Virus record (IMG/VR): IMGVR_UViG_3300044797_000098
Location: 1 to 64,000 of that record
DNA length: 64,000 nt
Direction: 5' to 3' (one strand)
The position numbers and the translations under genes are program-made. Below the pieces are notes generated by a model. The model worked only from the letters and a program-made list of their open reading frames with translations, had not been told where the DNA came from and did no database searches. Shown in pieces: positions 6,388 to 37,364 of the stretch (position 1 is the stretch's first letter; each line of letters starts with the position of its first letter).

Positions 6388-6816
6388 TCATATTAGGATG
6401 AGGTATTTTTGAGCAACATCGAATGCTTTCTTATACTCGTTGTGGTAATTGTTCATCTCATCTATCAGGTAAGAGTAATCGCCCTCTTTATAGTCAGCAA
6501 CAATAATACCAAACGGATTAACTTCCATATCGTGTAATTGTTTTCCTGTAATAGGAATGGGCATCTTATTGATATCGAATCTAGTTATTGACAAGACACC
6601 GGTTAGCCATTTGCCGGGCTTATCGTGCCTATGGATGTAATCATTGCGTGTTCCATCGAAGTGCTGGCCGAGCAATAGGTAGAAACTGCTCCGCAGGAGC
6701 TTCGCTCTTCTACTTCCACTAAAATTGCCAAGGAAGATTGGCTCCCCAAACAATGGCTTTTCCATTGGCATCTCTATGCTACTGCTCCGCAGGAGCTTCG
6801 CTCTTCTTCTTCGCAA
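6388..6816 (-). CDS. Hypothetical protein containing a 24-nt insertion (true start probably near MPMEK)
   Basis: ORF track; the RAKLLRSS peptide comes from the inserted element. Confidence 0.55.
   Translation of the reverse strand: MRRRRAKLLRSSSIEMPMEKPLFGEPIFLGNFSGSRRAKLLRSSFYLLLGQHFDGTRNDYIHRHDKPGKWLTGVLSITRFDINKMPIPITGKQLHDMEVNPFGIIVADYKEGDYSYLIDEMNNYHNEYKKAFDVAQKYLILI
6686..6709. repeat. 24-nt dispersed hairpin element, copy A
   Basis: CTGCTCCGCAGGAGCTTCGCTCTT, identical at four loci. Confidence 0.95.
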
Positions 6817-7088
6817 TCAATATCGATATACGGGATTACCAACTCACCAGCACTATCCAATTCAGAATGAAGGAAGATCGTTCCGACAACTTTCTTCTTC
6901 GTTTTATTGCCTTGATCACCAATCTCGTATTCAGCATTGAACATTGCAGTCATTCTCTTGTGTTGATTGCCAACTTCGTAGAATGTAATCGTTGGCTCAC
7001 GCTTGAATGTTGAATGCAATGCCTGCCTCAATGCTTGCTTCACACCGAAGTTAGGCGCAATGAATACATGAACGTTGGAGATGCGCAC
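6774..7088 (-). CDS. Hypothetical protein
   Basis: 104 aa, co-oriented with flanking genes. Confidence 0.6.
   Translation of the reverse strand: MRISNVHVFIAPNFGVKQALRQALHSTFKREPTITFYEVGNQHKRMTAMFNAEYEIGDQGNKTKKKVVGTIFLHSELDSAGELVIPYIDIDCEEEERSSCGAVA
6782..6805. repeat. 24-nt dispersed hairpin element, copy B
   Basis: Identical copy, in frame at the 3' end of ORF 6774..7088 (ERSSCGAV). Confidence 0.95.
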
Positions 7089-7329
7089 TTGTTATACCGA
7101 GTAATTCAATGGAACGATGTTCTCTTTGCCGGACTTGTCAATGAGAATAAGCGTTGGCGTTTCGACGTGAAGGATTGCGGTTGGGAACACATCTCCAGCA
7201 CGCAACTGATTGCTGATATCCTTCTTCAATGCAACGTTGTGGAAGACCCAATGAGTTTCTTCCTTGTTCGTTGGATTACCATCTTTCCAATTGATCAACT
7301 TGCTAATTGCTTTCATGTGTGATTTTCCT

Positions 7330-7425
7330 TTACAGTATTTTCAATAGGACAATTACTGCTCCGCAGGAGCTTCGCTCTTCTACGATTATTGTGCCACATA
7401 TGAGTTCAAGATTTGTGGTGCTCAT
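7330..7425 (-). CDS. Small hydrophobic peptide interrupted in frame by the 24-nt element (not in ORF track)
   Basis: MSTTNLELICGTIIVEERSSCGAVIVLLKIL; removing the element restores a continuous hydrophobic helix IIVVIVLLKIL. Confidence 0.5.
   Translation of the reverse strand: MSTTNLELICGTIIVEERSSCGAVIVLLKIL
7356..7379. repeat. 24-nt dispersed hairpin element, copy C
   Basis: Identical copy. Confidence 0.95.
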
Positions 7426-7761
7426 TGGTTATGCTTTTCCTTCTTCGAACCAAACTTCTCTTTGAGTTCATGCACAGCCCAACGGGCAAGTTCGTTTCCA
7501 ATTGTTGTTAGAATTGCAGTTGCAGTCATAACAATGATGTAAGGGCGCCAACTATCTTTCCAGTCTTCTTGTGGATTGAACATCACTTATGTGATTCCAT
7601 TGTCTCTTTTGCCAATTCAATCAATCTAACTGGAACGCTTCCGTCCTCGGCATATAACCCGAGAAAATCACAAACTGCATCGGCAAGCAACTCTACATTA
7701 CCGTCAAAATTGTTGCAGTTAGCACGCAACCAACCCTTTGCTTTTCGTTCCTCAACTGGCT

Positions 7762-8793
7762 TCATTGATTACCTTTCTCAATTCTAAACTCAACATCCTT
7801 ATCATAACTGGCTTTTATGATTTCTTTAAGAGTCTTCTCTGCTTGTTCAAGCACGAAGCGTTCGACTTCAAAAGTGGATTGAAACCGAGCCCGGCTGACG
7901 TCGATGGCGCGGTCGCTGCGCAAAATGTTTGCATCAAAATCAAACCAACCATGAGTAGTGAGAACTTCTTTTGCACCACCTAATGGGTTTTTCGTGATGA
8001 TGTAATTTTTTGAAGATTCAGTCTTATCGCATGGACAATTTACATGCCAGACCTTCTTATCACAGACAGGAATGTCCTTTACCTTCTTTGCTGGCTTTGC
8101 TTTCTTCGTTCGCTTTGCGATATGAACTCGCCCATCGCTTGGAGGATTACGAAGACTCTTTACTACTTCGATTGCTTCATGACGATAGAACAATGTTGCA
8201 TCACTCTTCTTGAGTTGCCAAGCACCAAGATACTCGTTCCAGTATTCGAGTTGCATTACATTCTTGTCGTCCATAATCTCTTGGCGGACAACATAATCGC
8301 AACCATCAACGTCCAACTTTTGAGTTGCAGAATTCTTCGCAGAATATTCACTGGTATCTTCCCACGTTTTAGCAGCAATGGACGGGATATCATACGTATG
8401 ATCTTGTGCAACCTTCTTGTATGTATTAGTGTACAAATCAGCCAGATAATACTCATATCCATAATCAACGATCGAATTACGCAAGTCTTTAATGATCTCC
8501 CTGCGTTCAGTTTCGTTAGTCTCATTATACCATAGATTACACAGATCATAAATGCCAGCATCCCTAAGCGCGAGTTCAATTACATCATCAATGAAGCCTT
8601 CACTTAGACCATTTTCTTGCATAGCACGTTCAACATCATATAGCATTCCATGCTGATGTTTGTTAGTCTTGAATGGAATCTCTTGCGCGACCTTCTTGTA
8701 TGTGTCTCCGCCCCACACAATGGTATCCGCATCGAGCATTTCAATGCGTGGAAAATCCATATGAACATCTGGAATCAACTTATACTTTGTCAT
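7762..8793 (-). CDS. Hypothetical phage protein
   Basis: 343 aa ORF downstream of a consensus-like promoter. Confidence 0.75.
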   Translation of the reverse strand: MTKYKLIPDVHMDFPRIEMLDADTIVWGGDTYKKVAQEIPFKTNKHQHGMLYDVERAMQENGLSEGFIDDVIELALRDAGIYDLCNLWYNETNETERREIIKDLRNSIVDYGYEYYLADLYTNTYKKVAQDHTYDIPSIAAKTWEDTSEYSAKNSATQKLDVDGCDYVVRQEIMDDKNVMQLEYWNEYLGAWQLKKSDATLFYRHEAIEVVKSLRNPPSDGRVHIAKRTKKAKPAKKVKDIPVCDKKVWHVNCPCDKTESSKNYIITKNPLGGAKEVLTTHGWFDFDANILRSDRAIDVSRARFQSTFEVERFVLEQAEKTLKEIIKASYDKDVEFRIEKGNQ

Positions 8794-8825
8794 CTTCGTT
8801 CCTTTTTTTTGAATTCACGCTTACC

Positions 8826-8854
8826 AGTATAAGCACGCGCGCACGCACGCGCAA
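8826..8854 (-). promoter_or_regulatory. Sigma70-like early promoter
   Basis: TTGCGC-17 nt (GTGCGTGCGCGCGTGCT)-TATACT. Confidence 0.55.
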
Positions 8855-10519
8855 GTGTCCAGTGTAGGATACACTACTACATTAGTGTCATTCACTTACC
8901 AATCCCATCAATCACCCTGGGAATCGTTCGCGTCAACCACTCCGCTTGCTCAACTGTTAGAACCATCGACTGAATCATCTTACCAACGTCATCATACGAA
9001 CGAACTTCGATCAAACCCAGTCCATCAAAATCTTCGCTGGCTTGAAGATACTCGCCAGTATTATTACGATACAATCGATACATAATCTCTTCGTTATACG
9101 TTGCCATTGTCATTCTCCATCTACTGATTGTGGCTCATCATGGTAAGTGCCATCATCCCATCGATATACACCAGTGTATATAACGAGCTGTCCTTTGTTG
9201 TCTGTATCCAACTCGCATGGGGCTACACCACTAACCAGATCGATGATGCCGTCTTGAACTTCTGCTATGGTATATGTAGCCATGTTAATTCAACTCTCCA
9301 ACCATCACAACAACAGAAGTAATCGTAGTCGGAACAATTACATCACCAGCATCATATTGACCAAGCAATTGAACATCGTTCGTCCATACAATCAACACTG
9401 GTTGTCCGACAACAATCGGATTGCTGATCTCACGATACGTTTTCCAATTACCATCATTGCCAAGTCGTTCCGTGCCAGCACACAAACCTGACACTCGTCG
9501 AACTTGCTTATTAGTTTCATTGACTTCGTAGATACTACCTGACTTTGTTTCGAAACGCATTTGATTTATTCCTGTGGATATGGGGTATTCTTGAATGGAA
9601 CAACTTCGTGATGACCTACATCCTTCGAAGGAAAGATATACGTCTTTGGGTATGATTCTGTGTGTCCACACGTAGGACATGGGTGATGGGCGCCAATCAG
9701 AACATACGTAGCAGGCTTTTCTTCCAACTCTACATAGCCATCAATGCGATTACCATCGTCATCATGACTGCCATTCGTTTCATCTACTTGATTCCACCAT
9801 ACTGCAATATTGGAACACACGTGGCAGATGATGTCAGAGTAGTCGTATGCATCTCTGGTGAAGTAATGACCTTTGGCACATAGGTATTGTGTTGCCTTCG
9901 AAACTCAATTAGCACCTCCAATAACATTCAATGCATACCCATACGTATCAAGTGCTTGTCTTGCTTTCCTTGCAACATCACGATCCCCATCGATGATGCT
10001 CTCATTGAGATATGTCTCACGATGACGACTGGAAAGAATGCGAATGGTCTGAACGAGAATGGCTTTGGATTGGATTGTCGAATACATCGTTGATCCTTTA
10101 ATTGAAGGAGTTGTAGATTGCCAACAGACACATTGCGATCAGAACAAGGATTTCAAACGTTATGATTGCTTGGACTATTTTGTATGCCATGCGTATGTGC
10201 TCATTGATTGCTGGCATTGAATGGATTGCATTTGACAATACCATTGTTAGCACACCAATCATTTGGTGCCACTATCACAGTGTATCCTGCTGGACACTTC
10301 TTTGCCATACAAGCCACCCAATCAGTTTCGGAACATCTATATCTAGTGCTCTACGATTGATTGTAATCTCACATAGAGCGTTGCTAACTTTTTCCGGTTA
10401 GCATCGGACACCACACTAATTTTCGTCAGGTGGATTACCCCACGACTTCTTCTATGAAGAATGGTCGAACAAGCAAGAGGGATGCTACTATTTCATCCCT
10501 CCTGCTCATTCATTGTCTT

Positions 10520-10795
10520 TCAGAGTTCAACCGTTTCCTTGGCCTTCGGTTCATTCTGCCCACGCAGAATCCAACGGGTCTTACCGTTGATCGGACGCGA
10601 CAGAATGGTGAGGGTCTTTCCGTTGCGAGACACCCGACGAACCTCGCCGAGTTCAGCAGCAATCTTCTCAATGAGAGCGCTCTTGCGATCGGTCAGTTCC
10701 GCAAGTTGCGCTTTGAGATCCGCTTCGAGAGCAACGGTCTCATTGTCGAGGTTGTCAATCTGAGAGAAAAGGGCACTAACTGCTTGCTTGTTCAT
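10520..10795 (-). CDS. Coiled-coil hypothetical protein, paralog of 43520..43825
   Basis: Heptad-like N-terminus, then GKTLT...LRG...K..VEL shared with the paralog. Confidence 0.65.
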   Translation of the reverse strand: MNKQAVSALFSQIDNLDNETVALEADLKAQLAELTDRKSALIEKIAAELGEVRRVSRNGKTLTILSRPINGKTRWILRGQNEPKAKETVEL

Positions 10796-10941
10796 TGTTG
10801 TTTTCCTTTGTTGTTGTGTGTCTTCGTGTCAGTTTCGTTGTTGTTTGTTGCGGGGCGTTATTGCCTCGCGATGGGTAGAATATAGCAACGGTTCGAAAAC
10901 CGTCAAGTGCGCAAGCGAAGAAAAGATCGGGACGGAAGGTT

Positions 10942-11208
10942 TCATAGGACTGGCGAGCACTTATGCGTGCCCGACTTGTTAGAGCGGAAGCAAGACGGAC
11001 AGCACGCATAGGGGAACCACGTTGCAATCGGAGTGTCGCACCGAGCGCAAGCGTTCGTCTCTCCTCTATTGTCGGGCTGGACGTTCTCGCCTACATCGCA
11101 CACCGGACAATACAGTTCCTCACAGATTTCCAGCAAGGGTGAATTACAAGCATCGCACATACCACTACGAATATGGTTGCGTGTGTGGATGTAAGATACA
11201 GTGCCCAT
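10942..11208 (-). CDS. Small zinc-finger protein
   Basis: Four CxxC pairs. Confidence 0.55.
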   Translation of the reverse strand: MGTVSYIHTRNHIRSGMCDACNSPLLEICEELYCPVCDVGENVQPDNRGETNACARCDTPIATWFPYACCPSCFRSNKSGTHKCSPVL

Positions 11209-11210
11209 AA

Positions 11211-12079: not shown

Positions 12080-12129
12080 TTCTCCATTTCGTCTCAATCT
12101 TTAGGGTGTTGAGCAACCGTTATACCTAC

Positions 12130-12158
12130 AATATACTCACACTATACAATTTTGTCAA
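12130..12158 (-). promoter_or_regulatory. Sigma70-like promoter inside the array, upstream of the last repeat
   Basis: TTGACA (12153-12158)-17 nt-TATATT (12130-12135). Confidence 0.7.
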
Positions 12159-12164
12159 GACTCA

Positions 12165-12225
12165 CGTCATATAAACTTATGAGCCTGAGTTTCGATCTTA
12201 TAGGGCGTCGAACAACCATTACTAC
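12165..12225 (-). ncRNA. crRNA-like regulatory RNA (variant repeat plus a guide against the cas12 promoter)
   Basis: Variant repeat keeps its stem through compensatory changes; the first 11 guide nt TCAGGCTCATA equal 14465-14475, next to a TTG PAM. Confidence 0.8.
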
Positions 12226-12484
12226 TCCTCTCAATCTTTAGGGTGTTGAGCAACCATTACTACATGATGGCATTCATCTTTTAGTTGATGGAGGATTGTC
12301 AGTCTCAATCTTTAGGGTGTTGAGCAACCATTACTACCTGATAGTTCTCACTGCATCGGAGCCGGATAATGCCGTCTCAATCTTTAGGGTGTTGAGCAAC
12401 CATTACTACCAACTTGATAACAAACGTATCTATGGAAAAGAACGATTAGTCTCAATCTTTAGGGTGTTGAGCAACCATTACTAC

Positions 12485-12605
12485 CAGTGTCGAAAATTAC
12501 TTCGTGATTTCAACCACTTACGATAGCGTTTTCGAGCACCTCTTCCTGACCCGTCTCTTGGCAACTATACTAACCCAAGAGACGGGTTTGTCAAGTGGCA
12601 CCTAA
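12485..12605 (-). promoter_or_regulatory. CRISPR leader with promoter and inverted repeats
   Basis: TTGACA-16 nt-TAGTAT (12567-12594); perfect 13-bp inverted repeat 12549-12561/12575-12587; 7-bp inverted repeat TCGAAAA/TTTTCGA at 12490-12535. Confidence 0.65.
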
Positions 12606-14402
12606 CTATGCGACTTCCATAAGGGTTTCCTCATTGCGAGCACCCTCGGGGGTTTTGGCGTCGCCTGACCGCTCGCGCTCAAGTCCGCGGTCAAGGATAT
12701 TGTTTGATGCATTCTCATCTCGATCATGTTCAACACCACAACCTTGACAAAAATACTTCAACATACCTTTGATATCATCATTGTAATAATGACATATTCC
12801 GCATTCTTTTGAAGTGCCACGAGCATCAACTTCGATATATCCTTCTGTCTTTCCTCTGCTACGCAATGCGTTCTTACACGCATTACGAAACTCACTTGGT
12901 GCAGTCAGTTGCCTATTAGTGCTTCCAGCATTACCTCGTGCAAGGTTAGACAGATTGATGTCCTCGAAAACAATCGAACCGTATTGATCAGCAAGTTTTG
13001 CTGCCAACTTACGATACTCTTCGTTTCGATATCCAACTCCGCGATTGCGTTGCGAAGAAGCCCACTGCCATAGATGGTGATCATGATATCTCCATCCCGC
13101 AATACCAGTTCCTTTTGTTAGTGTTTTCGTTTCTTTATTCCACGAACCACTAATACCATAAATCTCTTCATCTCCCGCAAAACGATTGGTTGACCATTGT
13201 TTCACCAATCTTGCAAGACGACCTTGCGATCTCCACTTATCCAAGTGTTCACATTCTTTCGTGAGCCATTCGGGCAAGTTTTCTTTTCCAGTCATCCATT
13301 CAACTAATGATTTACGAACAGCATCGAACTCCTTATCTCGAATGCTTTCGATTTCGTTAGCCTTTGATAGTGCTGCAATGACACTTGATGGGACACGAAT
13401 ATCCCATTCCTTATTATCAGTTCCTTTACCATATCCAATGCGAACCGATCCGTCTTGCATATCGCGCCAACCAAGATCAATACCAACGCACGATTGATTG
13501 TTGTGTGCAATTGTATTTTGATTGTCATTGAACGTAATAGACACCGTCCAATGTTCTCGTGCTCCAATCTTATTGCAACATACCTGTACAACCTGAATAA
13601 CGCTTCCAGTAGGAATATCACGATGATATACCATTGGAAACTCTGCCCAGATAGGCTTACGATCATTGTCGGTTCCAATACGGAGACGGAACAATCGCAA
13701 GTCTTTCTTACCAACCTTACGCATCGTTCCATCTACCTTTACAATTGGAGCAGGCATAGGAATGATCCGAACCATCTTGCTTGATGCTTCAATGCCAATG
13801 ACCTTATCAATAGGTTCATTGGGTTGAAACTGCTGAATACCAACACGACCTTCACCAAGATATGAACGGAAACGAGGATCATTCGGTTCAACACCATCAT
13901 ACAATGGCATCTTACGAGTTTTCTGAAACGCATCCTCAATCAACATATACGTTCCATACCACGGAGCAATATCACTCTTGCGAACCTCTGCAATCTTTAG
14001 GTTCGCTTGCTGATCAATAGCAGTTCGTTTTGCTTTGATATCCTCATTGCTACGAAGCAATCTGCGTGCTTCAATAAGTTTCGAGTTGATTTCTTTGCGA
14101 GCCTTCTTTGCATCCCTCAGTTCTTGCTTCATCTCATCGGTTGCAACGCGAGTGCGAGCATCCGCATTAGCTCGTTTGTTCCTCTTGTCGAACGCAATAA
14201 CCTTATCATCCGCTTCCTTTACTGCGACTTCCAGTTCAGGAATATCACCTGCTTGTCGTTCAATGGTTCGGATTTCATTTCTCCTCCATCGTTCAATCTC
14301 AATAAGTTTGTTTTGGTAATTGTGTCCCTTTCTAATCTGCTCCATAACAAGATCATGGTTCAGTGTGGGTGCCAGAAGTCCTAACTTGAAGGTGCGTGTC
14401 AT
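12606..14402 (-). CDS. cas12m: Compact type V CRISPR effector, Cas12m-like (subtype V-M / V-U1)
   Basis: 598 aa next to the array; long coiled-coil REC insertion, WYGTY and GEGRVGIQ segments, RuvC-I GIDLGWR, KWRSQGRL, RuvC-II VFEDINL, TAPSEFR, zinc finger, RuvC-III DRDENA; collinear with the Cas12m proteins as I recall them. Confidence 0.8.
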   Translation of the reverse strand: MTRTFKLGLLAPTLNHDLVMEQIRKGHNYQNKLIEIERWRRNEIRTIERQAGDIPELEVAVKEADDKVIAFDKRNKRANADARTRVATDEMKQELRDAKKARKEINSKLIEARRLLRSNEDIKAKRTAIDQQANLKIAEVRKSDIAPWYGTYMLIEDAFQKTRKMPLYDGVEPNDPRFRSYLGEGRVGIQQFQPNEPIDKVIGIEASSKMVRIIPMPAPIVKVDGTMRKVGKKDLRLFRLRIGTDNDRKPIWAEFPMVYHRDIPTGSVIQVVQVCCNKIGAREHWTVSITFNDNQNTIAHNNQSCVGIDLGWRDMQDGSVRIGYGKGTDNKEWDIRVPSSVIAALSKANEIESIRDKEFDAVRKSLVEWMTGKENLPEWLTKECEHLDKWRSQGRLARLVKQWSTNRFAGDEEIYGISGSWNKETKTLTKGTGIAGWRYHDHHLWQWASSQRNRGVGYRNEEYRKLAAKLADQYGSIVFEDINLSNLARGNAGSTNRQLTAPSEFRNACKNALRSRGKTEGYIEVDARGTSKECGICHYYNDDIKGMLKYFCQGCGVEHDRDENASNNILDRGLERERSGDAKTPEGARNEETLMEVA

Positions 14403-22277: not shown

Positions 22278-22279
22278 TG

Positions 22280-24368: not shown

Positions 24369-26732
24369 TTACTGACTGATCTTTCTTTGGTATTCCATAT
24401 GGTCTTGTTCTTCCAACGATCGGAAGCGCATAATACCTTGCGTAATTGCTTTCCGTTTCTCTGTGTTAGTTCCACTAAGGATCTTCTTCAAGCTACGTGC
24501 AGGTAATCCTGTTATAGTTCTGCACGCATGACTATTGTCCTGATCATCAAGTCCACTTACCAGACTATCAAAATCAACGTCTCCTGTCATTAGGAAGTAT
24601 AGTGGAACTGCTCTCAGCGCGATCTTTGCTCTCTCTTTCTTGGCTTCTAGTGATAGCTCTTCTTTGTCTTTGGCAGGGTCTTTATCTCCGCCATTGCTAT
24701 CGGTATTACCATCAGTATTACCATCAGCGCTATCATCTTCGTCATCACTATCATCGCTATTACCACTGTCATCTAGTCGCCTAGAGTTCTTGCCGTTCTT
24801 CACGTCGGACTTGTTTACTTCGATACCCTTGATCTTAGATCCATTCAGTTCGATATCATCAAGTCCTTCAACTAAGTCATCAAGGTTTATAGGAAGAAGA
24901 TCCTCGAACAATGATTGAAGTCCAACAAGACTGGTTGATCTGCCGAATCCCTCTTCCAGTTTAGCGATGAGTTCGTCGGCATTCATTGCTTTGAATTCCG
25001 TTCCCTCATAGCATAGAACGTTGAACACCTTCAACATCTCATTCAGAATTGGCTTCGGGTTAGCACCGTTAGCCGTAGCCTGAGCGAGCGTATACAAGTG
25101 TTCAAGCGTGCGATTGGGATTGAAGTCGAATACATAGCATTCGTGCTTCATTCCAACCCATGGTGTTTGTCCTCGGAATATAAGCTGAAAATACAACTGA
25201 GCGGATGTCATATCCGACAGAATAAATACCGATCCCCATTCGGGGATCGATACTCCGTGCCCTAGCTTTCCACATGAAAGAGTAATCGTTCCAATGTGTT
25301 TCTTGTTGCGACCACTCTCTACGTCTGCAATTCTGCTCTTGACGAGTTGAACAGTATCAGGTCCTTCATCACCATTAGCACCTGCTGCAATGATGATATC
25401 ATAATGCTTATAAACTCGGTGTTTTTTAAGCATAGCTGCGGTAAGTTCCACGGCTTTCACATTGCGAGGTAGATACCATAGAGCATGCCGAAGATTGATT
25501 TCGGAATACCTAGAGTGCTTTGAGTATGGCATCTCCAACTCATGAGACATCATATCAAGAAAAGATTTGACGGACTTTTCATTGATGAATGAGGGAACTC
25601 CTTTTACCTTTTCTTCAATCGAAAAGAGTTTTGTGAATGTGAAGCCCTCGTCTTCGGTGAAGACGTCGGCATCCTCATACAACTCTGGAGAGAGAAGAAT
25701 GGTATGTAATGTCATAGGGCAGAGCCAATAGTATTGCCCATCTTTCTCAGCATTAGCTTGTCCGAGTCGAGCAAGCTCTTCTGCGCGAACATATTGCTCG
25801 TTTAGATATGACCAAGAGAACATTGCGTCTGGTTCGAAACGCTCTTCCAATAGAGCACGGAAGGGCGTTCCACTAAGATTGAGAATGTGCTTACAGTTAA
25901 GCTTAGCAAGCGCCTCTTTCGTGTTCGGAGTATCGAATGCGAGATGACACTCATCTTTGATGAGAAGATCGAATACCATGTTTGGGAAGTTCTTGAACTT
26001 AGGCTTCAATAATCCTTCTTTGGTTAGACGAGCAAGATCCTGCAATGATGCGAATATGATTGTTCGCTTGTTAGGATCGACAACGATCGGATCACTAACC
26101 TTACTTGCATCAATGAAGTTATCCTTGCCGAAGTCAAAATCGACATGATCCATTGCGTCAATCCAAGATTGTTTCGTATCAGTAGGACGACCAGTCAAAA
26201 TAAGAACGAGACCGAAATCCATTCTCATAATGAGCTGGTATGCAGCGTGCGTCTTACCAAAACGCATCTTACAATCCCAGAGAAACTCTCTCGTAAGATT
26301 TTCATCCTTAGACATGAAGGCAATGGTAATCGCTAGGCATTCGTCTTGTTCAGAACGAAGAAGAAACGATAGCAACTTACGATTACCATGATTGGCTGCA
26401 TTGAAGTAGAGAGTGATCTGTTGGACAAGGAAGTTATAGTCAGACACTAGTAGAGAGATTACTTCTCTGCCCCTACCACGATTGGCTCCGAACTTCTTTG
26501 CGAACGTAGAACATAGATGCTTACGGACACCTGCATCACCAAGATTAGTAGGGAAGAAGCAATGTTCAATATCACCTGGACAATGACGCTGATGTTCTCC
26601 GAGACGTTGATCGCGAGCACCAGCATTGTTATCAGACAATCCAATCTTGAAGTTGACACGATCAGTTGGAAGAAGATTGGTTATGTTGGGCCCAGTAAGA
26701 TACACACCGCGAGTATGAATAGGAGCAGCCAT
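24369..26732 (-). CDS. Restriction-type enzyme: N-terminal GIY-YIG/T5orf172-like nuclease plus SF2 helicase
   Basis: KIGLS...RL.EH N-terminal motif; Walker A CKMRFGKT, DECH, LSGTPF, and motif VI QLIFRGQTP. Confidence 0.8.
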   Translation of the reverse strand: MAAPIHTRGVYLTGPNITNLLPTDRVNFKIGLSDNNAGARDQRLGEHQRHCPGDIEHCFFPTNLGDAGVRKHLCSTFAKKFGANRGRGREVISLLVSDYNFLVQQITLYFNAANHGNRKLLSFLLRSEQDECLAITIAFMSKDENLTREFLWDCKMRFGKTHAAYQLIMRMDFGLVLILTGRPTDTKQSWIDAMDHVDFDFGKDNFIDASKVSDPIVVDPNKRTIIFASLQDLARLTKEGLLKPKFKNFPNMVFDLLIKDECHLAFDTPNTKEALAKLNCKHILNLSGTPFRALLEERFEPDAMFSWSYLNEQYVRAEELARLGQANAEKDGQYYWLCPMTLHTILLSPELYEDADVFTEDEGFTFTKLFSIEEKVKGVPSFINEKSVKSFLDMMSHELEMPYSKHSRYSEINLRHALWYLPRNVKAVELTAAMLKKHRVYKHYDIIIAAGANGDEGPDTVQLVKSRIADVESGRNKKHIGTITLSCGKLGHGVSIPEWGSVFILSDMTSAQLYFQLIFRGQTPWVGMKHECYVFDFNPNRTLEHLYTLAQATANGANPKPILNEMLKVFNVLCYEGTEFKAMNADELIAKLEEGFGRSTSLVGLQSLFEDLLPINLDDLVEGLDDIELNGSKIKGIEVNKSDVKNGKNSRRLDDSGNSDDSDDEDDSADGNTDGNTDSNGGDKDPAKDKEELSLEAKKERAKIALRAVPLYFLMTGDVDFDSLVSGLDDQDNSHACRTITGLPARSLKKILSGTNTEKRKAITQGIMRFRSLEEQDHMEYQRKISQ

Positions 26733-26750: not shown

Positions 26751-28283
26751 TTATACGTCGTCTAGATTGATTACATTGGCAAGACGATCGAAGTCTCTCG
26801 ACGTCTTTGGTTGTCGTTGCTTCTTTTCTGCTTTGGCTTTGGGGGCTTTGGCAGGCTTGTTTCCCTTACTGCGAAACACGATATAATTTCGTGTAGTTTT
26901 TTCCACATGTTCAATCTCTTCCTTAGAGAGATCAAACATCGCATAGAGATCTTCGTTCGAATACGAACGAGTGAAGTCGAGATACGGAACGAATTTGAAT
27001 GTCTTGGATGAAGTATTCTTTACCTTCAGAAGTGAAACAAGATACTGTACGAGATAGGTATTGATGAATGCTTCCGCGTTCTTTACCTCTTCATTGGTAT
27101 CAAAAACACCAATCACGAGATACGTTTCACTAACGATGTTGCCAGGCTTCACAATGAATGTCTTGCCGGTCGAACCACGTTCCGCTCCATACGCCTTTGG
27201 AATACAGAGTTTCCACTTATCAATAGTATCTAAGTTTTTGGCGATATGTTTCTTGTTAACAAGCTTAGTCATCTCTCCACCGCCACTACCGCCTTTAACA
27301 TGGCATACATATGACGTTTCAAAATCGTCTGACCAATCCGAATAATTGCTTCGCAATCCATATGGATTGGAGAGTAGCATCTTAGATTCAAAAAACGTAT
27401 CGCACTTTGCTACCACCTTATCACGAATTGTTACTCCCACAACAAGAATAACCTCCTGTCCCTCAAGATTCATATCTTTACCATTGATCTTTACGACATG
27501 ATCGTTCTTGGAAGCTTCCCACATAAAATACATCACACCACCAGGAATAAGCACACCAGGAAACCAGTCTTCCGATTTTTCCGTAGAAACTATGTTCGTA
27601 AGCTTCTTACACGAGAGCATCATTTTCAAAAATGATGACGTGCTTTTTCCATTACCAGTCATCCACGGAGCAGGAATAACCATACTAAGATAGCTTGGAT
27701 TACACTCAGTTGCTTTTTGCACGAAGTCAGGATACAATGCACCAGCCGACGCACCTCCTCCACCAGCACCATCACTCAATTGGTAAGGCGGATTGCCAAC
27801 AATACAATCAAACTTCACATACGTTTCTTTCCCATTAGCTTCCTTCTTCACCATAACTTCTCCGTTCTTACCTAGTCTTGCTTTCAGGAAGTCTCGCGTC
27901 TGAACATTCCCTTTCAGCGTCAGAAACCCCCTCATATTATTCCACACTTTGCCTAGATAGTTCCTACGAACAATTAGCTCGCAAGCAGGCGTAGGAGCGA
28001 ATGAATAAATCATCTCATTGACAATCCAGTTTCGTCTCTCTTCGTAATCTGGAATAGCAACAATCAATCCCATCATCAATCGTCGAAACAACTCCAACTC
28101 AAACTCACCGTTCTTGCTAACAGGCACAAGCCACTTCAATCGAGGATTACTCCACACATCTTTAGGAAACGACTCACACATATTGAAAACCAACGGTGCG
28201 GGCGTCTTCACCATCTGATTCTCATTCTTCTTTTGAACGGGATTAGGAAGTCGGGCATGAAACGCAGCAGTCATTGTAGTCAA
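26751..28283 (-). CDS. N6-adenine DNA methyltransferase, Eco57I-like, with target-recognition domain
   Basis: FDCIVGNPPYQ catalytic motif IV; its SAM-binding motif I looks degenerate (WLVPVSKNGEF). Confidence 0.85.
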   Translation of the reverse strand: MTTMTAAFHARLPNPVQKKNENQMVKTPAPLVFNMCESFPKDVWSNPRLKWLVPVSKNGEFELELFRRLMMGLIVAIPDYEERRNWIVNEMIYSFAPTPACELIVRRNYLGKVWNNMRGFLTLKGNVQTRDFLKARLGKNGEVMVKKEANGKETYVKFDCIVGNPPYQLSDGAGGGGASAGALYPDFVQKATECNPSYLSMVIPAPWMTGNGKSTSSFLKMMLSCKKLTNIVSTEKSEDWFPGVLIPGGVMYFMWEASKNDHVVKINGKDMNLEGQEVILVVGVTIRDKVVAKCDTFFESKMLLSNPYGLRSNYSDWSDDFETSYVCHVKGGSGGGEMTKLVNKKHIAKNLDTIDKWKLCIPKAYGAERGSTGKTFIVKPGNIVSETYLVIGVFDTNEEVKNAEAFINTYLVQYLVSLLKVKNTSSKTFKFVPYLDFTRSYSNEDLYAMFDLSKEEIEHVEKTTRNYIVFRSKGNKPAKAPKAKAEKKQRQPKTSRDFDRLANVINLDDV

Positions 28284-29437: not shown

Positions 29438-29516
29438 GACCTATTCTCCTTCATGTCGGACTGAATTGTCCGCCACCACACCCATACACATATGCACGGA
29501 TGCGGTAGCAGAAACT

Positions 29517-29942: not shown

Positions 29943-29948
29943 TACCTC

Positions 29949-31681: not shown

Positions 31682-33745
31682 TGTTTGTTTCCTTTGTTAT
31701 TGCACCACGCAAGCACGCGCATGTGCGTATGCTTGCATAGAACACTAACACATATCAACCAGCGCGAATGAAATACCGAACACCCTGATATTCGATTTCG
31801 TTATAGTCGCTTTCACAATCATCACTCACAGCGCGCCAATCGATATTGCTTCTGATTACTTCGGGCAGGTGAGAAAGATCGGGATGCATCTCCTCCATCT
31901 GATCCTCAATGTAGTCCTCAAAATCACCTTCTTCGATCAAGCAATCATCGATATTTTTGCTATACACATGCAAGTCGCCAAGCGTATCCTCAATGGCAAT
32001 CAACTCGTTATACTTCGCTTCTTCGTCTTCGTCAAAAGATTGACCGTCAGTACCAAAACAACCTGCTTTCTCGCGCAAGTCATCCAATTCATTCGCAAGG
32101 TCTTTGAGAGATAGAGTATTCATTGTGTCCTCCTAATAGAGACTGTCAGCGTTATCGTTGTTGCCCTTGTAATAGGACACGTCGCCGTCCTTGTCAAGTT
32201 TCACGCACATGGCAGACTGGAATATCCGACATACATTATGACCGGGCGTTTCCATCTTCGCAAGCCACTTCACCTTCTTCTTTACTGCATCGAGGTTCTT
32301 GCAATAGTAATACACTTGCGGATTGACGAATACGATGTAGTTCATTAGAGTCGTCCTTTCAGTGCGTCGTCAATAGCGTTCAACTTCTGCGCCATCACAT
32401 GGAGATCAAGATCACTATTCTCAATCTCATCAGCAATGGTATTGATTGCTTGTGCTTGCATACGAAACAAGTGAGCAAGCGCCTCTCGATTATACCTTGG
32501 GCATGAATGTTCTTGTGTGTTATCCATCATGCTAACACAACCCTGACACATTATGCGAAGCATCTTACGCCTCTGCCATGTTGATCAATGCCAGCAAGTT
32601 CCCAGCATTCAACTTCTCAATCTGCTCCGCAATGTGTCCAGCATACTTATCTACCAACTGCTCTTCTCTACCGGACTGTGAGTGTTGATATGCAACTTCG
32701 TTCGCACGCCTGCGAAGCCACCAGTATGTATCATCGACGAGCATAGTATCCCCTTCCATAGACGGCAATCAACTTACCATTGTTCGTTAGCATCACGGTA
32801 TCATCACTACCGACATATGCTTCGTATTCTTTGCGTGCTTCGTTCTCATCATTGCCGAAGTTTATGTGATGGCTTTCTTCTATGCCCGGACAACATTCAT
32901 CATCCGACAATGCAACGAACACTTCCCACTTATCCATATCGGACGACTCGTCTTTATCCACATTGTCGGATGGGCAACATTGATTAGGGTTGTCTCGCAT
33001 GAATGACTTTCGCAAGTCATGAAGATTGAGTGATTGCTTCAAGATCGTCATACGATAGGCAATCGACTTAAAATAACTGGTCAGTTCTTTACGCATATGC
33101 TTCATTGTATTTGGTCTTTCCTGTATATGTCTGTTTGTATTTGATTTCCCCACCACCACACTCGCTTGCACGAATGTGGTAGTCGAGAGGTCAATCTCTA
33201 CTTACACACTACTAATTGATGTAGTTTTCGTTCCATTCCCAAGTCCATCACACCCAACAATCAAGTCAGATGTGATAGCAGAAACTTCAACCTACTTACA
33301 TCACCCACTCCACTTTACAATCCTCACACCGATATGTCTTACATGGAATACTCGTACCATCTAAGTATGCTTCATCCGGTATGCTATGACACTCCGGGCA
33401 ACGATGAGGCTTGTCAGTATTAGAATCTACCTTCTTGTATTCCACTGCATGGAATAGTCTGTTGCTCCACTGGAAGTCAAGTGATCCATCTTCCATGTCA
33501 TCCCACAACACCATCACAGATAGCGTATTGTCTTCCACGACTTTGATGGTGCCATATCGGAATGGCTCCTTATCGTGCGCTACTCTGTCGTTTACCTTCC
33601 AGCCTTCAAGCCCCGTTGCTACATTACCACGCATTGTTATCTCCTACATAGGTAGAAACACACACGCAACCATACACTCCAAACCACAACGAGCGCTGTA
33701 AGGAATGCAATCGTCTTTCCTGCGATGTTATCAAACATATGATGT

Positions 33746-34249
33746 CTAAACATAGTGTGATAGTTCCTTACCAACAATTGCTTTGATTAGTTGCAAGCGC
33801 TCAACCTCGTAGATATTCTCATAGTCTGGTTCAAATATACCTTCACCATTGCAGTTATCGCACTTGATCTCGTCGCCTTCGTCATTGACGATCATACCAG
33901 ACTTATCGCATACCGGGCAATCTTCATATTGCGGTTCTGAATCAGAATAGTCCTCGCACATGACATCGATATACAACTTCGATGGCAAGTCTTCCAATGC
34001 TTCTTTGATTGCAATACAGGCTTCCTCAAAACTAAACCCGCTCCACTCATTCTCATTGCCATGCTCGTCAGTCGCTGGCGCACAACAATCACTCGCACAT
34101 GGCGGACCGAAGTGTAAATCATAATTAGCAAGACGAACCGCTTTTGCAACTTCTGCATCGAAGTGCTGTTTGCGATAGTCTTTTGCGAATGTCTCCAATA
34201 CTCTGTCGTATGCTTTATTCATTGTTCTAAAACCTCCAATCCAGCACAC
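33746..34249 (-). CDS. Hypothetical protein with DnaJ-like zinc finger
   Basis: CPVCDKSG...CDNCNGEG. Confidence 0.6.
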   Translation of the reverse strand: MCWIGGFRTMNKAYDRVLETFAKDYRKQHFDAEVAKAVRLANYDLHFGPPCASDCCAPATDEHGNENEWSGFSFEEACIAIKEALEDLPSKLYIDVMCEDYSDSEPQYEDCPVCDKSGMIVNDEGDEIKCDNCNGEGIFEPDYENIYEVERLQLIKAIVGKELSHYV

Positions 34250-34276
34250 ACGTGTGTATGTGCTGGCGCAGAGACG

Positions 34277-34669
34277 TTAGACTTCCGTATTCAATGCAAT
34301 ATCAAAACTCTCGTAGATGTAGTCTTTGATGCCGTTCCTGTTTCTACCAGAAACCGTCATATGAACACCGTGGAATGACGGAGATACTCTGACAACATGC
34401 TCTGTCCAACCATCATATGATCCGTTCTCATCCATATGATGATATGCCGTACAAAAGACAAGCCTGTTATTACTAACCTCTAAATCAATTTTAGTACCAC
34501 TATCAAAACCCGACCCCGAGGGAAGATGATTACGAACAAGTTCTTCAATCTTTTCCTCGAGCTTCAACTTCCACTCGGAATTGAACCCATCAATGCAATT
34601 CAATCTCGCCTGAACCAACATTGCAAGTTTAGCGTATAGTTTCATCATTACTTCCTTTCCGGCTTGCAT
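34277..34669 (-). CDS. Hypothetical phage protein
   Basis: 130 aa, co-oriented. Confidence 0.6.
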   Translation of the reverse strand: MQAGKEVMMKLYAKLAMLVQARLNCIDGFNSEWKLKLEEKIEELVRNHLPSGSGFDSGTKIDLEVSNNRLVFCTAYHHMDENGSYDGWTEHVVRVSPSFHGVHMTVSGRNRNGIKDYIYESFDIALNTEV

Positions 34670-35254
34670 GCTTTGCGGAAACGATCCTCATCGAAGTTAG
34701 GATTGTCCGATTGAAAGAATAGAACGAATGCATTCTCAACGGCAATGGGCGCTCGACAATCATACACCGTTTCACCATCCTGATGCCTTATCGCGAATAC
34801 ATCAGTCATGTAGAGATCTTGCACCATCTTCGCTGCCTTATTGTAATTCTTCTTCATCATCATGATACTTTCTCCTTTGCCAACATAACGCTGAAACCAA
34901 TAGTGGTGATTATAACAATACCAACCCAGAACCCAGCGAATCCATATGAATGCTCGCTAATATCCAAGCCGGTATTGATACAGCCAATTAGAATCAATGT
35001 CATATCAACCGTGGCGAATAGATGCTTCATTGCTAATTCCTATTGATGATTGTAATATTATACTCCGCTGATCTCTTTGCCTTCTTGTATCTCACATTCA
35101 AGTAGAATGCAACTGATGCAACCTTGTCTCTACACATGTAGAGTGCGAACTTGCTTCTGTATTCTGGAAGAATCGTATATGTGTTCATAGCTCTTTCCTC
35201 GTTTCAGAATGCTCATTACCGCCCATGCATATACACGGGCGGGATATGAACACA

Positions 35255-35689
35255 CTAAATGTAGATCATTCCATTGTCGCCAACATAACAATCAACTTCA
35301 CCATACGCTTGTGCGTTAGTATGCAGGCGATCCCTAACATCTTCATCGATGTAGTCCCTATCTTGGAAGCCTACTCCGTGCCTGTTTCTCGTCAAAAACA
35401 AGTCGTGCCCACACTGCTCTTTCCCACTCCAATTACCATCATTCGTGCGCCGATACGGAATCGTTGCAATATCAGACGCATTCTCCTCTTGGAACTTCTT
35501 GCAGTCCGCAACGATCTTGATCATAGCAGACTCCGCAATGTCGTCAATCGAATAATTCTTGTCGAGGGGAACGTCATCGTCATCGCAGGATGCCCATAGC
35601 ATGGCGTCCACGTAGGCTTGTGTAAAACTGTCAATCTCATTCCATACGCTCATTGTTCCACCTTGTATTGGAAGTGTTGTTCTCCCCAA
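35255..35689 (-). CDS. Hypothetical phage protein
   Basis: About 130-144 aa acidic protein, GHD...TRNRHG.GF motif. Confidence 0.6.
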   Translation of the reverse strand: MGRTTLPIQGGTMSVWNEIDSFTQAYVDAMLWASCDDDDVPLDKNYSIDDIAESAMIKIVADCKKFQEENASDIATIPYRRTNDGNWSGKEQCGHDLFLTRNRHGVGFQDRDYIDEDVRDRLHTNAQAYGEVDCYVGDNGMIYI

Positions 35690-36042
35690 CCATTGATGTC
35701 AGCATCATCCCACTTCAATATTAGGATGCCATTCTTGATAGCAAGAACCTCACCAACTCCATTGTATCTAATCATCAATCGATCGCCAACCTCTGCGGGG
35801 CTATCTTTGAACACAATGATCTTATGACCATTACCAGCAGTGTGCATCTCGCATCTAATCGTTTTTGCTTCTCTCTTCATGGGAGATTGCATGAGAAACT
35901 CAATGGCACGTTCAAGTTTTAGACATGCCTCTCTTGCGTCCTGAACATTCTTGACATCAATATCCAATTCTGGATACTTATTACAAGGATGCCCGTTATC
36001 ATCCAATACTTCAATTGGAATCTTAATTCTGAACGTTGCCAT
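35650..36042 (-). CDS. Hypothetical protein
   Basis: GGAG RBS; its upstream region is split by the tnpB copy 3 insertion. Confidence 0.6.
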   Translation of the reverse strand: MATFRIKIPIEVLDDNGHPCNKYPELDIDVKNVQDAREACLKLERAIEFLMQSPMKREAKTIRCEMHTAGNGHKIIVFKDSPAEVGDRLMIRYNGVGEVLAIKNGILILKWDDADINGWGEQHFQYKVEQ

Positions 36043-36155
36043 TGCAATCTCCCTTGTTATTAGAATTGTTGCTATTATAAGGCGTCCCAGAAAAAATCGA
36101 CATCTAACCGAAAAATACTTGACATTTTCTACTACTATCGTTATATATAAGAGTA

Positions 36156-37364
36156 ATGCAACGAACGATCTCTATCAAAATTGACGCACCAGCAGAGTTT
36201 TTAGATTACCTAAAAGCTTGCAACGAGCTATACAGCAGGTATGTTGAATGGTGTTTCGAGACCAAGAGCTACAATAAGAATAAATCTCATACCGAGCTAT
36301 ATGAAAAGTTTCGTCAGGAGTTTCCAAGTATCAATTCTGCCACCATTCAGTGTATTAGAGATAATGCACTTGAAAGCGTCAAGGCATTGAAATTCAAATT
36401 CAAGCCGAAAAAGAAGCCACATTCTCATATTCGTTTTGATAAGAGAACGATCGCTCTTCGAGGTGATCAACTATCGTTTGCATGGTCAGGTGATCGTATC
36501 AAACAGATCATAAAGATACCAGAGTTTTTCAAAAAACGATATGGATCTTGGAAGTTTCAGGCAGCAACAATAGGCTATAATAAGCATAAGAAGCAATTCG
36601 TTGCTAATCTGATTTTTCAATCAACTGCTCCGCAGGAGCTTCGCTCTTCTGCTCCGCAGGAGCTTCGCTCTTCTGCTCCGCAGGAGCTTCGCTCTTCTTC
36701 ACCTGAAAAGAAAGGTGATCGTGTAGTTGGTATCGATCGTGGACTGTATAACATAGTGTCTCTATCTGATGGTTTCAAGTATGCTTCCAATCAGGTCAGA
36801 AAAGTGAAACGAGAAGTCTTGTTTCTCAAAAAGCAACTTCAAACAAAAGGCACCCATAGTGCTAAACGCAAATTGAAAGCGTTGTCTTGCTATGAGAAGC
36901 GGTTTAGTTTGAATGTCAATCATATCATCAGTAAATTGTTAGTTTCGTTGCCATACGATATTTTTGTTCTCGAAGACTTGAAAGGTATTCGTAAGCAAAA
37001 ATCAAAAGGCAAACGACTAAACAAGTGGCTTGCTAACTGGTCATTTTGGCAATTAGAGGCTCTTCTGGGATATAAGGCAGAGATATTTTGCAAGCAAATT
37101 GTCAAAGTCGATGCTCGATATACCAGTCAAAAGTGCTGCAATTGCGGTCAAGTAGAAAAAGCCAATCGTGATGGCTCACATTACCACTGTGAGCGTTGTG
37201 GATTTAGGTGTCATTCGGATACGAATGCTGCTAAAAATATCCGCAATAACTATCTCATCTCTGCTGCTGAAAAACAGAAGGCAGAGCAGGCTATGTGTCA
37301 ATTAGCCGAATGCTTCGTATCGAAAGATACAGAAACAAGCCCCGTTGCTTTTAGCACGGGGTAA
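36156..37364 (+). CDS. tnpB: TnpB RNA-guided nuclease, copy 3, with a 3x APQELRSS insertion
   Basis: GIDRG, LEDL, HSDTNA RuvC motifs and zinc finger; right end CAAGCCCCGTTGCTTTTAGCACGGGGTAATTGA. Confidence 0.93.
   Translation: MQRTISIKIDAPAEFLDYLKACNELYSRYVEWCFETKSYNKNKSHTELYEKFRQEFPSINSATIQCIRDNALESVKALKFKFKPKKKPHSHIRFDKRTIALRGDQLSFAWSGDRIKQIIKIPEFFKKRYGSWKFQAATIGYNKHKKQFVANLIFQSTAPQELRSSAPQELRSSAPQELRSSSPEKKGDRVVGIDRGLYNIVSLSDGFKYASNQVRKVKREVLFLKKQLQTKGTHSAKRKLKALSCYEKRFSLNVNHIISKLLVSLPYDIFVLEDLKGIRKQKSKGKRLNKWLANWSFWQLEALLGYKAEIFCKQIVKVDARYTSQKCCNCGQVEKANRDGSHYHCERCGFRCHSDTNAAKNIRNNYLISAAEKQKAEQAMCQLAECFVSKDTETSPVAFSTG
36625..36696. repeat. Three tandem copies of the 24-nt hairpin element
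   Basis: (CTGCTCCGCAGGAGCTTCGCTCTT)x3. Confidence 0.95.

What the first reader, a model, noticed from the sequence alone, without database searches (positions are those of the whole stretch)
6685..36700. 24-nt frame-preserving mini-element inserted at ACTWC sites, including inside TnpB
Seen in sequence: CTGCTCCGCAGGAGCTTCGCTCTT is identical at 6686, 6782, 7356 and three times in tandem at 36625-36696. Removing it restores ACTAC, ACTTC, ACTAC and ACTTC (consensus ACTWC, equivalent to a CT duplication). It has no stop codon in any of six frames and sits in coding sequence in three different frames (RAKLLRSS, ERSSCGAV, APQELRSS). It carries overlapping triloop hairpins, GCTCC-GCA-GGAGC on one strand and GAGC-GAA-GCTC on the other. 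Established: GNA-triloop DNA mini-hairpins are exceptionally stable. Inference: a recently active, target-specific, REP-like selfish micro-element with an unknown mobiliser.
Basis: partly seen in the sequence, partly recalled or inferred. Interest (0 to 1): 0.75.

Follow-up and report, generated by a model that had tools for sequence, protein, structure and literature searches.

The report
24-nt hairpin mobile element in phage
A 24-base DNA hairpin unit has recently and precisely inserted itself at A|CTW sites, including in frame inside three conserved genes, in a 406-kb peat phage and at least two other genomes, making it one of the smallest mobile DNA elements seen, with no known transposase in the phage.

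Summary
CTGCTCCGCAGGAGCTTCGCTCTT occurs six times (four sites), all exact and all on the + strand, and nowhere else in the 406,470-bp genome even at 5 mismatches.

It is a real insertion. TnpB homologues carry the same flanks (46/48 nt) without the 72 nt. Homologues of two other genes lack exactly the 8 codons. A second peat sample holds two of the copies. A second phage contig has two exact copies, and an unidentified contig in the source sample has one.

All seven independent sites read A|element|CTW. Three G000 sites are in conserved ORFs in three frames; the 7356 copy is intergenic.

The genome is a huge tailed phage. I found no Y1, Y2, reverse transcriptase, serine, tyrosine or IS110 recombinase, only four TnpB genes and a Cas12-like gene.

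The best model is ssDNA cut-and-paste at C|T by a trans-acting HUH (RAYT/IS200-like) nuclease. The junctions allow C|T cleavage. On the + strand GCAG sits directly 5' of a hairpin, like the REP GTAG tag. The unit size matches 23-nt REPs. A related 27-nt unit forms a REPIN-like inverted doublet in a bacterial contig.

The insertion is well supported (about 0.9). The mobiliser is inferred (about 0.4).

The parts
6686..6709 (+). Copy 1. In frame inside the conserved 127-aa gene (6388-6771, - strand), where it adds RRAKLLRS.
   Evidence: Exact copy. Homologues P0122 and P0123 lack exactly these 8 residues. At DNA level the window reads AGT AG|24 nt|T TTC against AAT AGT TTC in L028.
6782..6805 (+). 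Copy 2. In frame in the 104-aa gene (6774-7088, - strand), two codons before the stop, where it adds ERSSCGAV. It also lies 11-17 nt upstream of the start of the 127-aa gene.
   Evidence: Without the unit the C-terminus reads CEEVA*, against FEEIA* in the orthologue of related phage G002. A contig from independent sample X2 spans it with no differences.
7356..7379 (+). Copy 3. Intergenic, 40 nt upstream of the 74-aa gene (7092-7316, - strand).
   Evidence: An X2 contig covering 7201-7425 spans it with no differences. It lies in the break between the 98.5% and roughly 80% identity blocks shared with G002.
36625..36696 (+). Copies 4-6. Three head-to-tail units in frame in TnpB, adding APQELRSS three times in the loop just before the RuvC-I GIDRG motif.
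   Evidence: TnpB homologues in L022-L026 have the same flanks (46/48 nt) and read CAATCAACTTCACC with nothing inserted. None of the 16 closest homologues has the 24 residues.
36156..37364 (+). TnpB gene (402 aa; typical relatives are 377-378 aa) that hosts the triple insertion. The ORF is intact.
   Evidence: Pfam PF07282, E = 1.5e-17; alignments.
6388..6771 (-). 127-aa gene of unknown function with an invariant YIHRH(D/N)K ... YKKA motif. It hosts copy 1.
   Evidence: The model has pLDDT 74 and no structural match.
6774..7088 (-). 104-aa gene that hosts copy 2 near its C-terminus.
   Evidence: Orthologue of 97 aa in L001/G002.

Best explanation
This is a real, recently active, ultra-small mobile DNA unit. 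It is 24 nt without target duplication, or equally 22 nt plus a duplicated CT. It inserts at A|CTW with little further sequence requirement. Its length is a multiple of three and it carries no stop codon in any frame, so insertions into the densely packed genes of a huge phage leave the reading frames open. The most likely mechanism (inferred, not shown) is single-strand cut-and-paste or copy-and-paste by a trans-acting HUH Y1 nuclease of the RAYT/IS200 type. In this model the enzyme binds the mini-hairpin. On the + strand it uses the AG of the GCAG tag, which lies directly 5' of the hairpin GAGC-TTC-GCTC, to select C|T dinucleotides. It cleaves at the two C|T that bound the unit (AC|TG...TTC|T) and transfers the 24-nt strand into another C|T on exposed ssDNA. 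A unit already in place recruits the enzyme to nearby C|T sites. That would account for the 3x tandem array and for three copies lying within 700 bp. The enzyme is not encoded by this phage; it would come from the host or a co-infecting element.
For: Shown:
- Precise empty sites exist at three coding insertions (16, 28; 75, 78, 83).
- All copies are identical, including two in a different phage contig, G001, at 43% GC.
- One further copy lies in an unidentified contig of the source sample.
- Independent sample X2 spans two of the copies.
- All 7 sites read A|CTW, against a chance match of about 0.01 per site.
- All four sites in this genome are on one strand and fall inside one 48-kb compartment.

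Compatible with the HUH model:
- The junction register is ambiguous over three positions, which permits cleavage between C and T.
- TnpAREP cleaves C|T, requires little more than that dinucleotide, and selects it through A3G4 of the GTAG tag 5' of the hairpin foot (PMC3333891, PMC8266576).
- It also cuts C|T sites over more than 400 nt around a bound REP (PMC3333891).
- One REP class is 23 nt long with a 3-nt loop (PMC8266576).
- The - strand carries two GCGNAGC mini-hairpins, which are known to be unusually stable (PMC13037366).
- A unit with the same 20-nt core forms a 27+29+27-nt inverted doublet, REPIN-like, in a bacterial contig. The same 25 nt occurs as a singlet between convergent genes in another contig.
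- Full IS605 elements with a Y1 TnpA occur in related contigs.
- G001 and this phage share tail-fibre genes, which suggests a common host.
Against: - No Y1_Tnp match in this genome at E <= 1, nor in the 25-kb G001 fragment.
- The tag is GCAG, not GTAG, and the stems are only 4-5 bp.
- The element is low-copy and mostly genic, unlike REPs.
- No high-copy family with this core was found in 185,579 reference genomes. The five 20-mer hits are single-copy and at chance level.
- The hairpins differ from the LE/RE hairpins of the resident and related IS605 elements.
- The two G001 copies lie on opposite strands only 1.3 kb apart, which weakens the strand-specific argument.
- No excision intermediate or within-sample empty allele could be examined, because only contigs were available, not reads.
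Confidence: 0.42

Rival explanations
1. The element is mobile, but it is moved by an enzyme of an unrecognised or different class. Candidates are a phage protein of unknown family, a rolling-circle Y2 enzyme, or something linked to the abundant TnpB/Cas12 nucleases, rather than a Y1 HUH nuclease.
For: No known transposase or recombinase family other than TnpB and a Cas12-like gene was found in the 406-kb genome. Three copies cluster around a rare 127-aa gene with an invariant HxH...Y-type motif. The unit does not meet the REP definition.
Against: The 127-aa protein model (pLDDT 74) matches no HUH or other nuclease fold: best Z was 4.6 and the best Foldseek E was 0.36. Its homologues have no unit nearby. 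TnpB is an RNA-guided nuclease with no known strand-transfer activity (established knowledge).
Confidence: 0.27
2. The element is a 22-bp unit that recombines through a conserved CT core dinucleotide by a site-specific recombinase, either a serine recombinase of the IS607 type or an IS110-type bridge-RNA recombinase. The CT at both junctions would then be the crossover core.
For: CT is present at both junctions and only once in the empty site. The internal junctions of a tandem array recreate a donor-like site. TnpB genes are often partnered with IS607 serine recombinases (established knowledge).
Against: Neither Resolvase nor the IS110 DEDD family was found. The flanks beyond A|CTW are not conserved, whereas these enzymes read about 11-14 nt or multiple binding sites. 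A 22-bp unit is too short to carry such sites.
Confidence: 0.08
3. The unit is primarily a regulatory or replication hairpin, for example a single-strand hairpin promoter like those of phage N4 or a priming signal. It would be spread between phages as a cassette by recombination at module boundaries, as PeSL elements are in T4-type phages.
For: GCGGAGC is the mini-hairpin contacted by N4 virion RNA polymerase, and GCGNAGC motifs occur at phage origins (PMC13037366). Copies 2 and 3 lie just upstream of genes and at breaks in similarity to G002.
Against: Three insertions are inside conserved ORFs with exact 24- or 72-nt differences and no flanking homology. The orientation relative to genes is inconsistent. 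A triple copy inside TnpB has no regulatory logic. A function of this kind could still coexist with mobility.
Confidence: 0.08
4. The copies are a sequencing, adapter or assembly artefact.
For: All copies are identical, and Logan unitigs break at them.
Against: A contig at an even depth of about 50 runs through two copies. A second sample and a separate IMG/VR assembly from another metagenome carry exact copies. The sites share a target motif and keep the reading frames of conserved genes.
Confidence: 0.02

Closest known systems
REP / REPIN elements and their RAYT (TnpAREP) Y1 HUH nucleases
   Same: Both are short hairpin units; one REP class is 23 nt with a 3-nt loop. A tetranucleotide ending in AG lies directly 5' of the hairpin foot. 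The junctions are compatible with C|T cleavage. Target specificity is low. Both show local and tandem clustering. A related unit occurs as an inverted doublet in a bacterial contig (PMC3333891, PMC8266576, PMC3116915).
   Different: The tag is GCAG rather than GTAG. The stems are 4-5 bp. There are six copies rather than hundreds, and most are inside genes. No RAYT is present in the genome. A single unit appears to move here, whereas REPIN theory treats singlets as immobile.
IS200/IS605 elements and their non-autonomous derivatives (PATEs)
   Same: Both show hairpin-bearing ends, insertion next to a short specific sequence without a clear duplication, strand bias within a replicon, and tandem reinsertion at a target that is retained. 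The phage lineage carries IS605 elements.
   Different: The 24 nt is far below the known minimal ends. The hairpins are unrelated to the resident LE/RE hairpins, and the target is not the TTGAC/TTGAT-like sequence next to those IS ends.
Small dispersed repeats (SDR, 21-27 nt) of Nostocaceae (Elhai et al. 2008, Genome Res 18:1484). Known to me from memory and from the mention in PMC5861425; the paper itself was not readable here.
   Same: Both are mobile-looking repeats in the 21-27 nt size range. The mobiliser of the SDRs is, as far as I recall, also unknown.
   Different: SDRs are confined to cyanobacterial chromosomes and, as I recall, are numerous. This unit is in phages from peat, has very few copies, and has a defined A|CTW target. 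Sequence relatedness was not tested.
Rickettsia palindromic elements (RPE)
   Same: Both are palindromic selfish repeats that insert in frame into protein-coding genes and are tolerated there (established knowledge; reviewed in PMC10969869).
   Different: RPEs are about 100-150 bp and old and diverged. Here the unit is 24 nt and all copies are identical.

Membership tests
REP/REPIN-RAYT system | Short (20-40 nt) palindromic unit that forms a hairpin in ssDNA | tested here: met
   Two alternative 4-5 bp / 3-nt-loop hairpins form on each strand. DNA fold energy is -4.9 kcal/mol, z = -2.2. The - strand carries GCGAAGC and GCGGAGC.
REP/REPIN-RAYT system | Conserved GTAG (or GTGG) tag at the 5' foot of the hairpin | tested here: not met
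   The + strand has GCAG directly 5' of GAGC-TTC-GCTC. Only the last two positions (AG) agree with GTAG (sequence). On the - strand the GWAG lies in the target, not in the unit.
REP/REPIN-RAYT system | High copy number, extragenic location | tested here: not met
   Six copies at four sites in 406 kb, three of the sites inside ORFs.
REP/REPIN-RAYT system | Cognate RAYT (Y1_Tnp) gene in the same genome, flanked by the repeat | tested here: not met
   A six-frame PF01797 search of the whole genome found no candidate at E <= 1, while the controls matched. The host genome is unknown.
REP/REPIN-RAYT system | Cleavage and strand transfer at a C|T dinucleotide on single-stranded DNA | not testable with these tools
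   The junction register (A-C-T ... T-T-C-T) allows C|T at both ends, but no enzyme assay or intermediate reads were available.
IS200/IS605 non-autonomous derivative (PATE) | Ends resemble the LE/RE hairpins of an autonomous IS of the family | tested here: not met
   The resident and related IS605 ends carry 8-bp stems such as CCCTTGCC or CCGCCAGC with 4-5 nt loops, unlike the unit.
IS200/IS605 non-autonomous derivative (PATE) | Insertion 3' of a fixed tetra- or pentanucleotide without duplication | tested here: inconclusive
   All 7 sites have A|CTW (WAG| on the - strand). The empty site has a single CT, so either no duplication or a 2-bp duplication is possible.
IS200/IS605 non-autonomous derivative (PATE) | Y1 transposase available | tested here: inconclusive
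   Absent from this genome. Present next to TnpB in relative G003 and in L025/L026.
Classical MITE (DDE transposase) | Terminal inverted repeats plus a fixed-length target duplication | tested here: not met
   The ends CTGCTCC and AAGAGCG are not inverted repeats, and there is at most an ambiguous 2-nt CT.
IS110-type (bridge RNA) or serine-recombinase element | Recombinase gene, and extended conserved target around the core dinucleotide | tested here: not met
   PF01548 and PF00239 were not found. The flanks beyond A|CTW vary.
Nostocaceae small dispersed repeats (SDR1-8) | Sequence belongs to one of the described SDR families | not tested
   The paper (PMC2527708) is not held. Only size and behaviour could be compared.

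The most novel reading that the evidence does not exclude
A single 24-nt REP-like hairpin unit, with no transposase of its own and none in its phage host genome, is an active transposon that hops between phages and bacteria in peat. Because nucleotide-exact empty sites exist, it would be the first natural case showing that one REP-sized unit, rather than a REPIN doublet or an IS, is enough for mobility. Alternatively, it would reveal a new mobilising enzyme.
Probability: 0.3. Interest if true: 0.85.

Novelty: new variant of a known kind. Interest (0 to 1): 0.68.

Why it matters
How REPs and other very short repeats spread is a long-standing open question. TnpAREP cuts and joins REP DNA in vitro, but precise natural insertion events of a single unit with matched empty sites are hard to come by.

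Here all copies are identical, the copies are few, and exact empty sites exist. That makes the insertion chemistry directly testable: the target is A|CTW and cleavage is possibly at C|T.

The finding also shows that huge phages can be colonised by frame-neutral micro-elements that add 8-residue peptides to proteins, including a TnpB nuclease. That is a source of protein variation in its own right, and such units could be mistaken for ordinary sequence repeats during annotation.

Tried and rejected
1. GenBank phages and PLSDB plasmids: there is no similarity to the loci, and only chance-level partial matches to the unit.
2. Exact 24-mer in 185,579 reference genomes: none. The 20-nt core gave 5 hits (two Streptomyces, Paenibacillus, a Bacillota MAG and an Acidobacteriaceae MAG). 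All are single-copy in their genomes, so they are chance matches.
3. Loop-degenerate pattern in IMG/VR: it found only the known G001 contig.
4. Larger element leaving a footprint: no half-sites or split copies occur in this genome or in three relatives.
5. Derivation from IS605 ends: the hairpins are unrelated.
6. The 127-aa YIHRH...YKKA protein as a hidden HUH nuclease: there is no Pfam hit. Only two homologues turned up in searches of collections of 5.8 and 1.84 billion protein sequences. The model is four strands plus two helices with no significant PDB or Atlas match. The idea is not supported.
7. Homologues of the 69-aa G001 gene that carries a copy: none found, so there is no empty site for that insertion.
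8. Link to the phage CRISPR array: no spacer matches the unit.
9. Rfam and promoter/terminator scans: nothing at the copies.
10. Identifying the organism of contig L006 through Acidobacteriaceae genomes: only a distant match at 36% identity. An exact-protein lookup returned the same contig.
11. The Elhai 2008 SDR paper could not be read.
Full report
**Observation**

The 24-mer CTGCTCCGCAGGAGCTTCGCTCTT occurs exactly six times in the window, at 6686, 6782 and 7356 and three times head to tail at 36625-36696. All copies are on the + strand, and none was expected in shuffles.

The window is the first 64 kb of a single 406,470-bp IMG/VR virus record (35.6% GC, CheckV completeness 95%). The whole genome holds no other copy at up to five mismatches, no half-sites, no other dispersed short repeat of this kind and no other twin mini-hairpin unit.

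The genome belongs to a huge tailed phage. It encodes baseplate J, a tail sheath and a DnaE-type polymerase. I found no NCLDV-capsid match, but that search's control genomes did not match either, so it says little.

**Is it an insertion?**

Yes, at nucleotide resolution.

- **TnpB (36156-37364).** This TnpB is 402 aa, against 377-378 aa for its relatives. None of the 16 closest homologues has the 24 extra residues. Homologues encoded in L022-L026 share the flanks (46 of 48 nt) and read ...CAATCAACTTCACC..., where the window has 72 nt between CAA and CTTC.
- **104-aa gene (6774-7088, - strand).** Removing the unit gives a C-terminus CEEVA*, against FEEIA* in the orthologue of the related phage contig G002.
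- **127-aa gene (6388-6771, - strand).** It has two homologues in searches of collections of 5.8 and 1.84 billion protein sequences. Both lack exactly the 8 residues. The DNA reads AGT AG|unit|T TTC against AAT AGT TTC.
- **Copy at 7356.** This copy is intergenic.

So three insertions lie in conserved genes, in three different frames relative to the unit, and one lies between genes.

**Is it an artefact?**

No.

- In the likely source run, a contig at a depth of about 50 runs from 5400 to 7381 through two copies.
- An independent peat sample holds contigs across the 6782 and 7356 copies with no differences.
- The source run also carries the unit with two other sets of flanks. One set is that of a different phage contig, G001 (25 kb, 43% GC, from another metagenome), which has two exact copies. 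The other set matches none of the genomes in hand.
- G001 shares only tail-fibre genes (67-78% aa identity), one cold-shock-like gene and an IS end with this phage. The tail-fibre genes suggest a common host.

**Target**

All seven independent sites read A|unit|CTW. The chance of a random site matching is about 0.01.

The unit starts with CT and is followed by CT, so the cut could lie at any of three positions. The event is therefore either a 24-nt insertion without duplication or a 22-nt insertion with a CT duplication.

The four sites in this phage all fall within the 42-45% GC compartment at 1-48 kb, which is 12% of the genome. Three of them lie within 700 bp, although A|CTW sites are equally frequent elsewhere in the genome.

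**Structure**

- The + strand folds as two adjacent 4-bp / 3-nt-loop hairpins.
- The - strand reads AA-GAGC GAA GCTC-CTGC GGA GCAG. This is two consecutive GCGNAGC mini-hairpins, a motif known for exceptional stability and nuclease resistance and found at phage origins and in the N4 early promoter (PMC13037366).
- The unit is stop-free in all six frames. This largely follows from its having only 2 A in 24 nt.

**Mobiliser**

Six-frame family searches of the whole genome found none of the following, and control genomes matched in each of these searches:

- Y1_Tnp
- Y2_Tnp
- reverse transcriptase
- serine recombinase
- IS110 DEDD transposase
- tyrosine recombinase

The phage has four TnpB genes and a 598-aa Cas12-like gene.

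Full IS605 elements with a Y1 TnpA sit next to close TnpB homologues in relative G003 and in contigs L025/L026. Their end hairpins are unrelated to the unit.

The 127-aa protein has an invariant HxH and a C-terminal tyrosine, which looked suggestive. Its model (pLDDT 74) matches no HUH or other nuclease fold.

**Mechanism (inferred)**

The pattern fits what is known of RAYT/TnpAREP enzymes better than any other class.

- These enzymes act on ssDNA and bind a REP hairpin.
- They cleave between C and T with little further specificity.
- They select the CT through the last two bases (AG) of the tetranucleotide at the 5' foot of the hairpin.
- They cut C|T sites over hundreds of nucleotides around a bound REP.
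- They perform strand transfer in vitro. One class of REP is 23 nt with a 3-nt loop (PMC3333891, PMC8266576).

On the + strand the unit reads C|T-GCTCC-GCAG-(GAGC TTC GCTC)-TT-C|T. That is a tag ending in AG at the hairpin foot, bounded by two C|T.

This model accounts for the junction register, the weak target motif, the tandem array (each copy brings a new C|T and a binding site), the local cluster and the single-strand orientation within this genome.

**A supporting lead**

The 20-nt core of the unit occurs in two bacterial metagenome contigs, which share 25 identical nucleotides with each other.

- In L004 it is a singlet between convergent genes.
- In L006 it forms a 27+29+27-nt inverted doublet, the REPIN format. 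The doublet lies inside an open GlpD-like ORF, at the point where alignment to solved GlpD structures stops.

I could not show that the L006 doublet is an insertion, and I could not identify the organism.

**Against the model**

- The tag is GCAG, not GTAG.
- The stems are short.
- No RAYT is in hand.
- No reference genome carries the core as a repeat family.
- The two G001 copies are in opposite orientation.

I therefore put the insertion and mobility at about 0.9 and the HUH mechanism at about 0.4. An unrecognised enzyme is the main rival. Site-specific recombination at a CT core, a recombination-spread regulatory hairpin and an artefact are minor rivals.

**Comparison with known elements and novelty**

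The unit works like a REP or a minimal IS200/IS605-type element, but it fails the defining tests of both families (tag, copy number, cognate enzyme, end similarity).

The nearest precedents in behaviour are two:

- the 21-27-nt small dispersed repeats of Nostocaceae, which I know from memory and from PMC5861425
- the in-frame Rickettsia palindromic elements

I know of no report of such a unit in phages. I class it as a new variant of a known kind. It could become more if a single unit is proven sufficient for mobility or if the enzyme turns out to be new.

Noticed in passing
window 12092-12489 and 12606-14402 (- strand): A phage-borne CRISPR array with five clear 36-nt repeats (GTCTCAATCTTTAGGGTGTTGAGCAACCATTACTAC, one diverged at 4 positions), a sixth more degenerate copy, and 36-39-nt spacers. 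It lies next to a 598-aa Cas12-like protein (PF07282). Spacer 12410-12448 matches 33/33 nt at two sites, and 30-32/33 at many more, in small MORN-repeat genes of the related phage contig G002. It matches this phage's own copy only 28/32 (384649-384680). This looks like phage-against-phage targeting.
   Followed up: partly
window 153-1190 (-), 2711-3820 (+), 36156-37364 (+); genome 305630-306673 (+): There are four TnpB genes. A 62-nt segment upstream of the second one (2584-2645) is 95-98% identical to the ends of contigs G001 and G003, so it is probably a shared IS left end at which those assemblies broke.
   Followed up: partly
window 1-48000 versus the rest of the genome: A compositional compartment: 42-45% GC in the first 48 kb against 31-39% elsewhere, with the GC skew changing sign near 47 kb. 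This compartment holds three TnpB genes, the CRISPR system and restriction-modification-like genes. It is shared with relative G002, so it is not an assembly chimera.
   Followed up: partly
window 7089-7094 and 7317-7421; L001 1517-1927 and 2171-2584: Related phage G002 has two MORN-repeat genes inserted exactly where this phage has only a TAA plus 3 nt between the 74-aa and 104-aa ORFs (which are in the same frame) and a 105-nt spacer. The MORN genes therefore behave like mobile cassettes.
   Followed up: partly
L006 556-638; L004 836-862: Bacterial metagenome contigs carry a related unit (25 nt shared, 20-nt core identical to the phage unit). In L006 it is a REPIN-like inverted doublet inside an open GlpD-like ORF; in L004 it is a singlet between convergent FloA and ABC-transporter genes.
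   Followed up: partly
window 6388-6771 (- strand): A rare 120-138-aa protein family (three members found) with invariant YIHRH(D/N)K and YKKA motifs. The predicted fold is four strands plus two helices, with no structural match.
   Followed up: partly
window 24369-26732 and 26751-28283 (- strand): An adjacent ResIII-type helicase/nuclease and an Eco57I-like methylase, which is a restriction-modification-like pair in the phage.
   Followed up: no
L003 about 770-810: Contig G001 carries one sequence closely resembling the CRISPR repeat of this phage, about 330 nt from its copy of the 24-nt unit, in a GC-rich non-coding stretch that starts with a TnpB-type 3' hairpin.
   Followed up: no
window 1488-1562 (-) and 59249-60271 (+): A tRNA-Lys (UUU) gene and an IMP dehydrogenase / GMP reductase family gene in the phage.
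   Followed up: no
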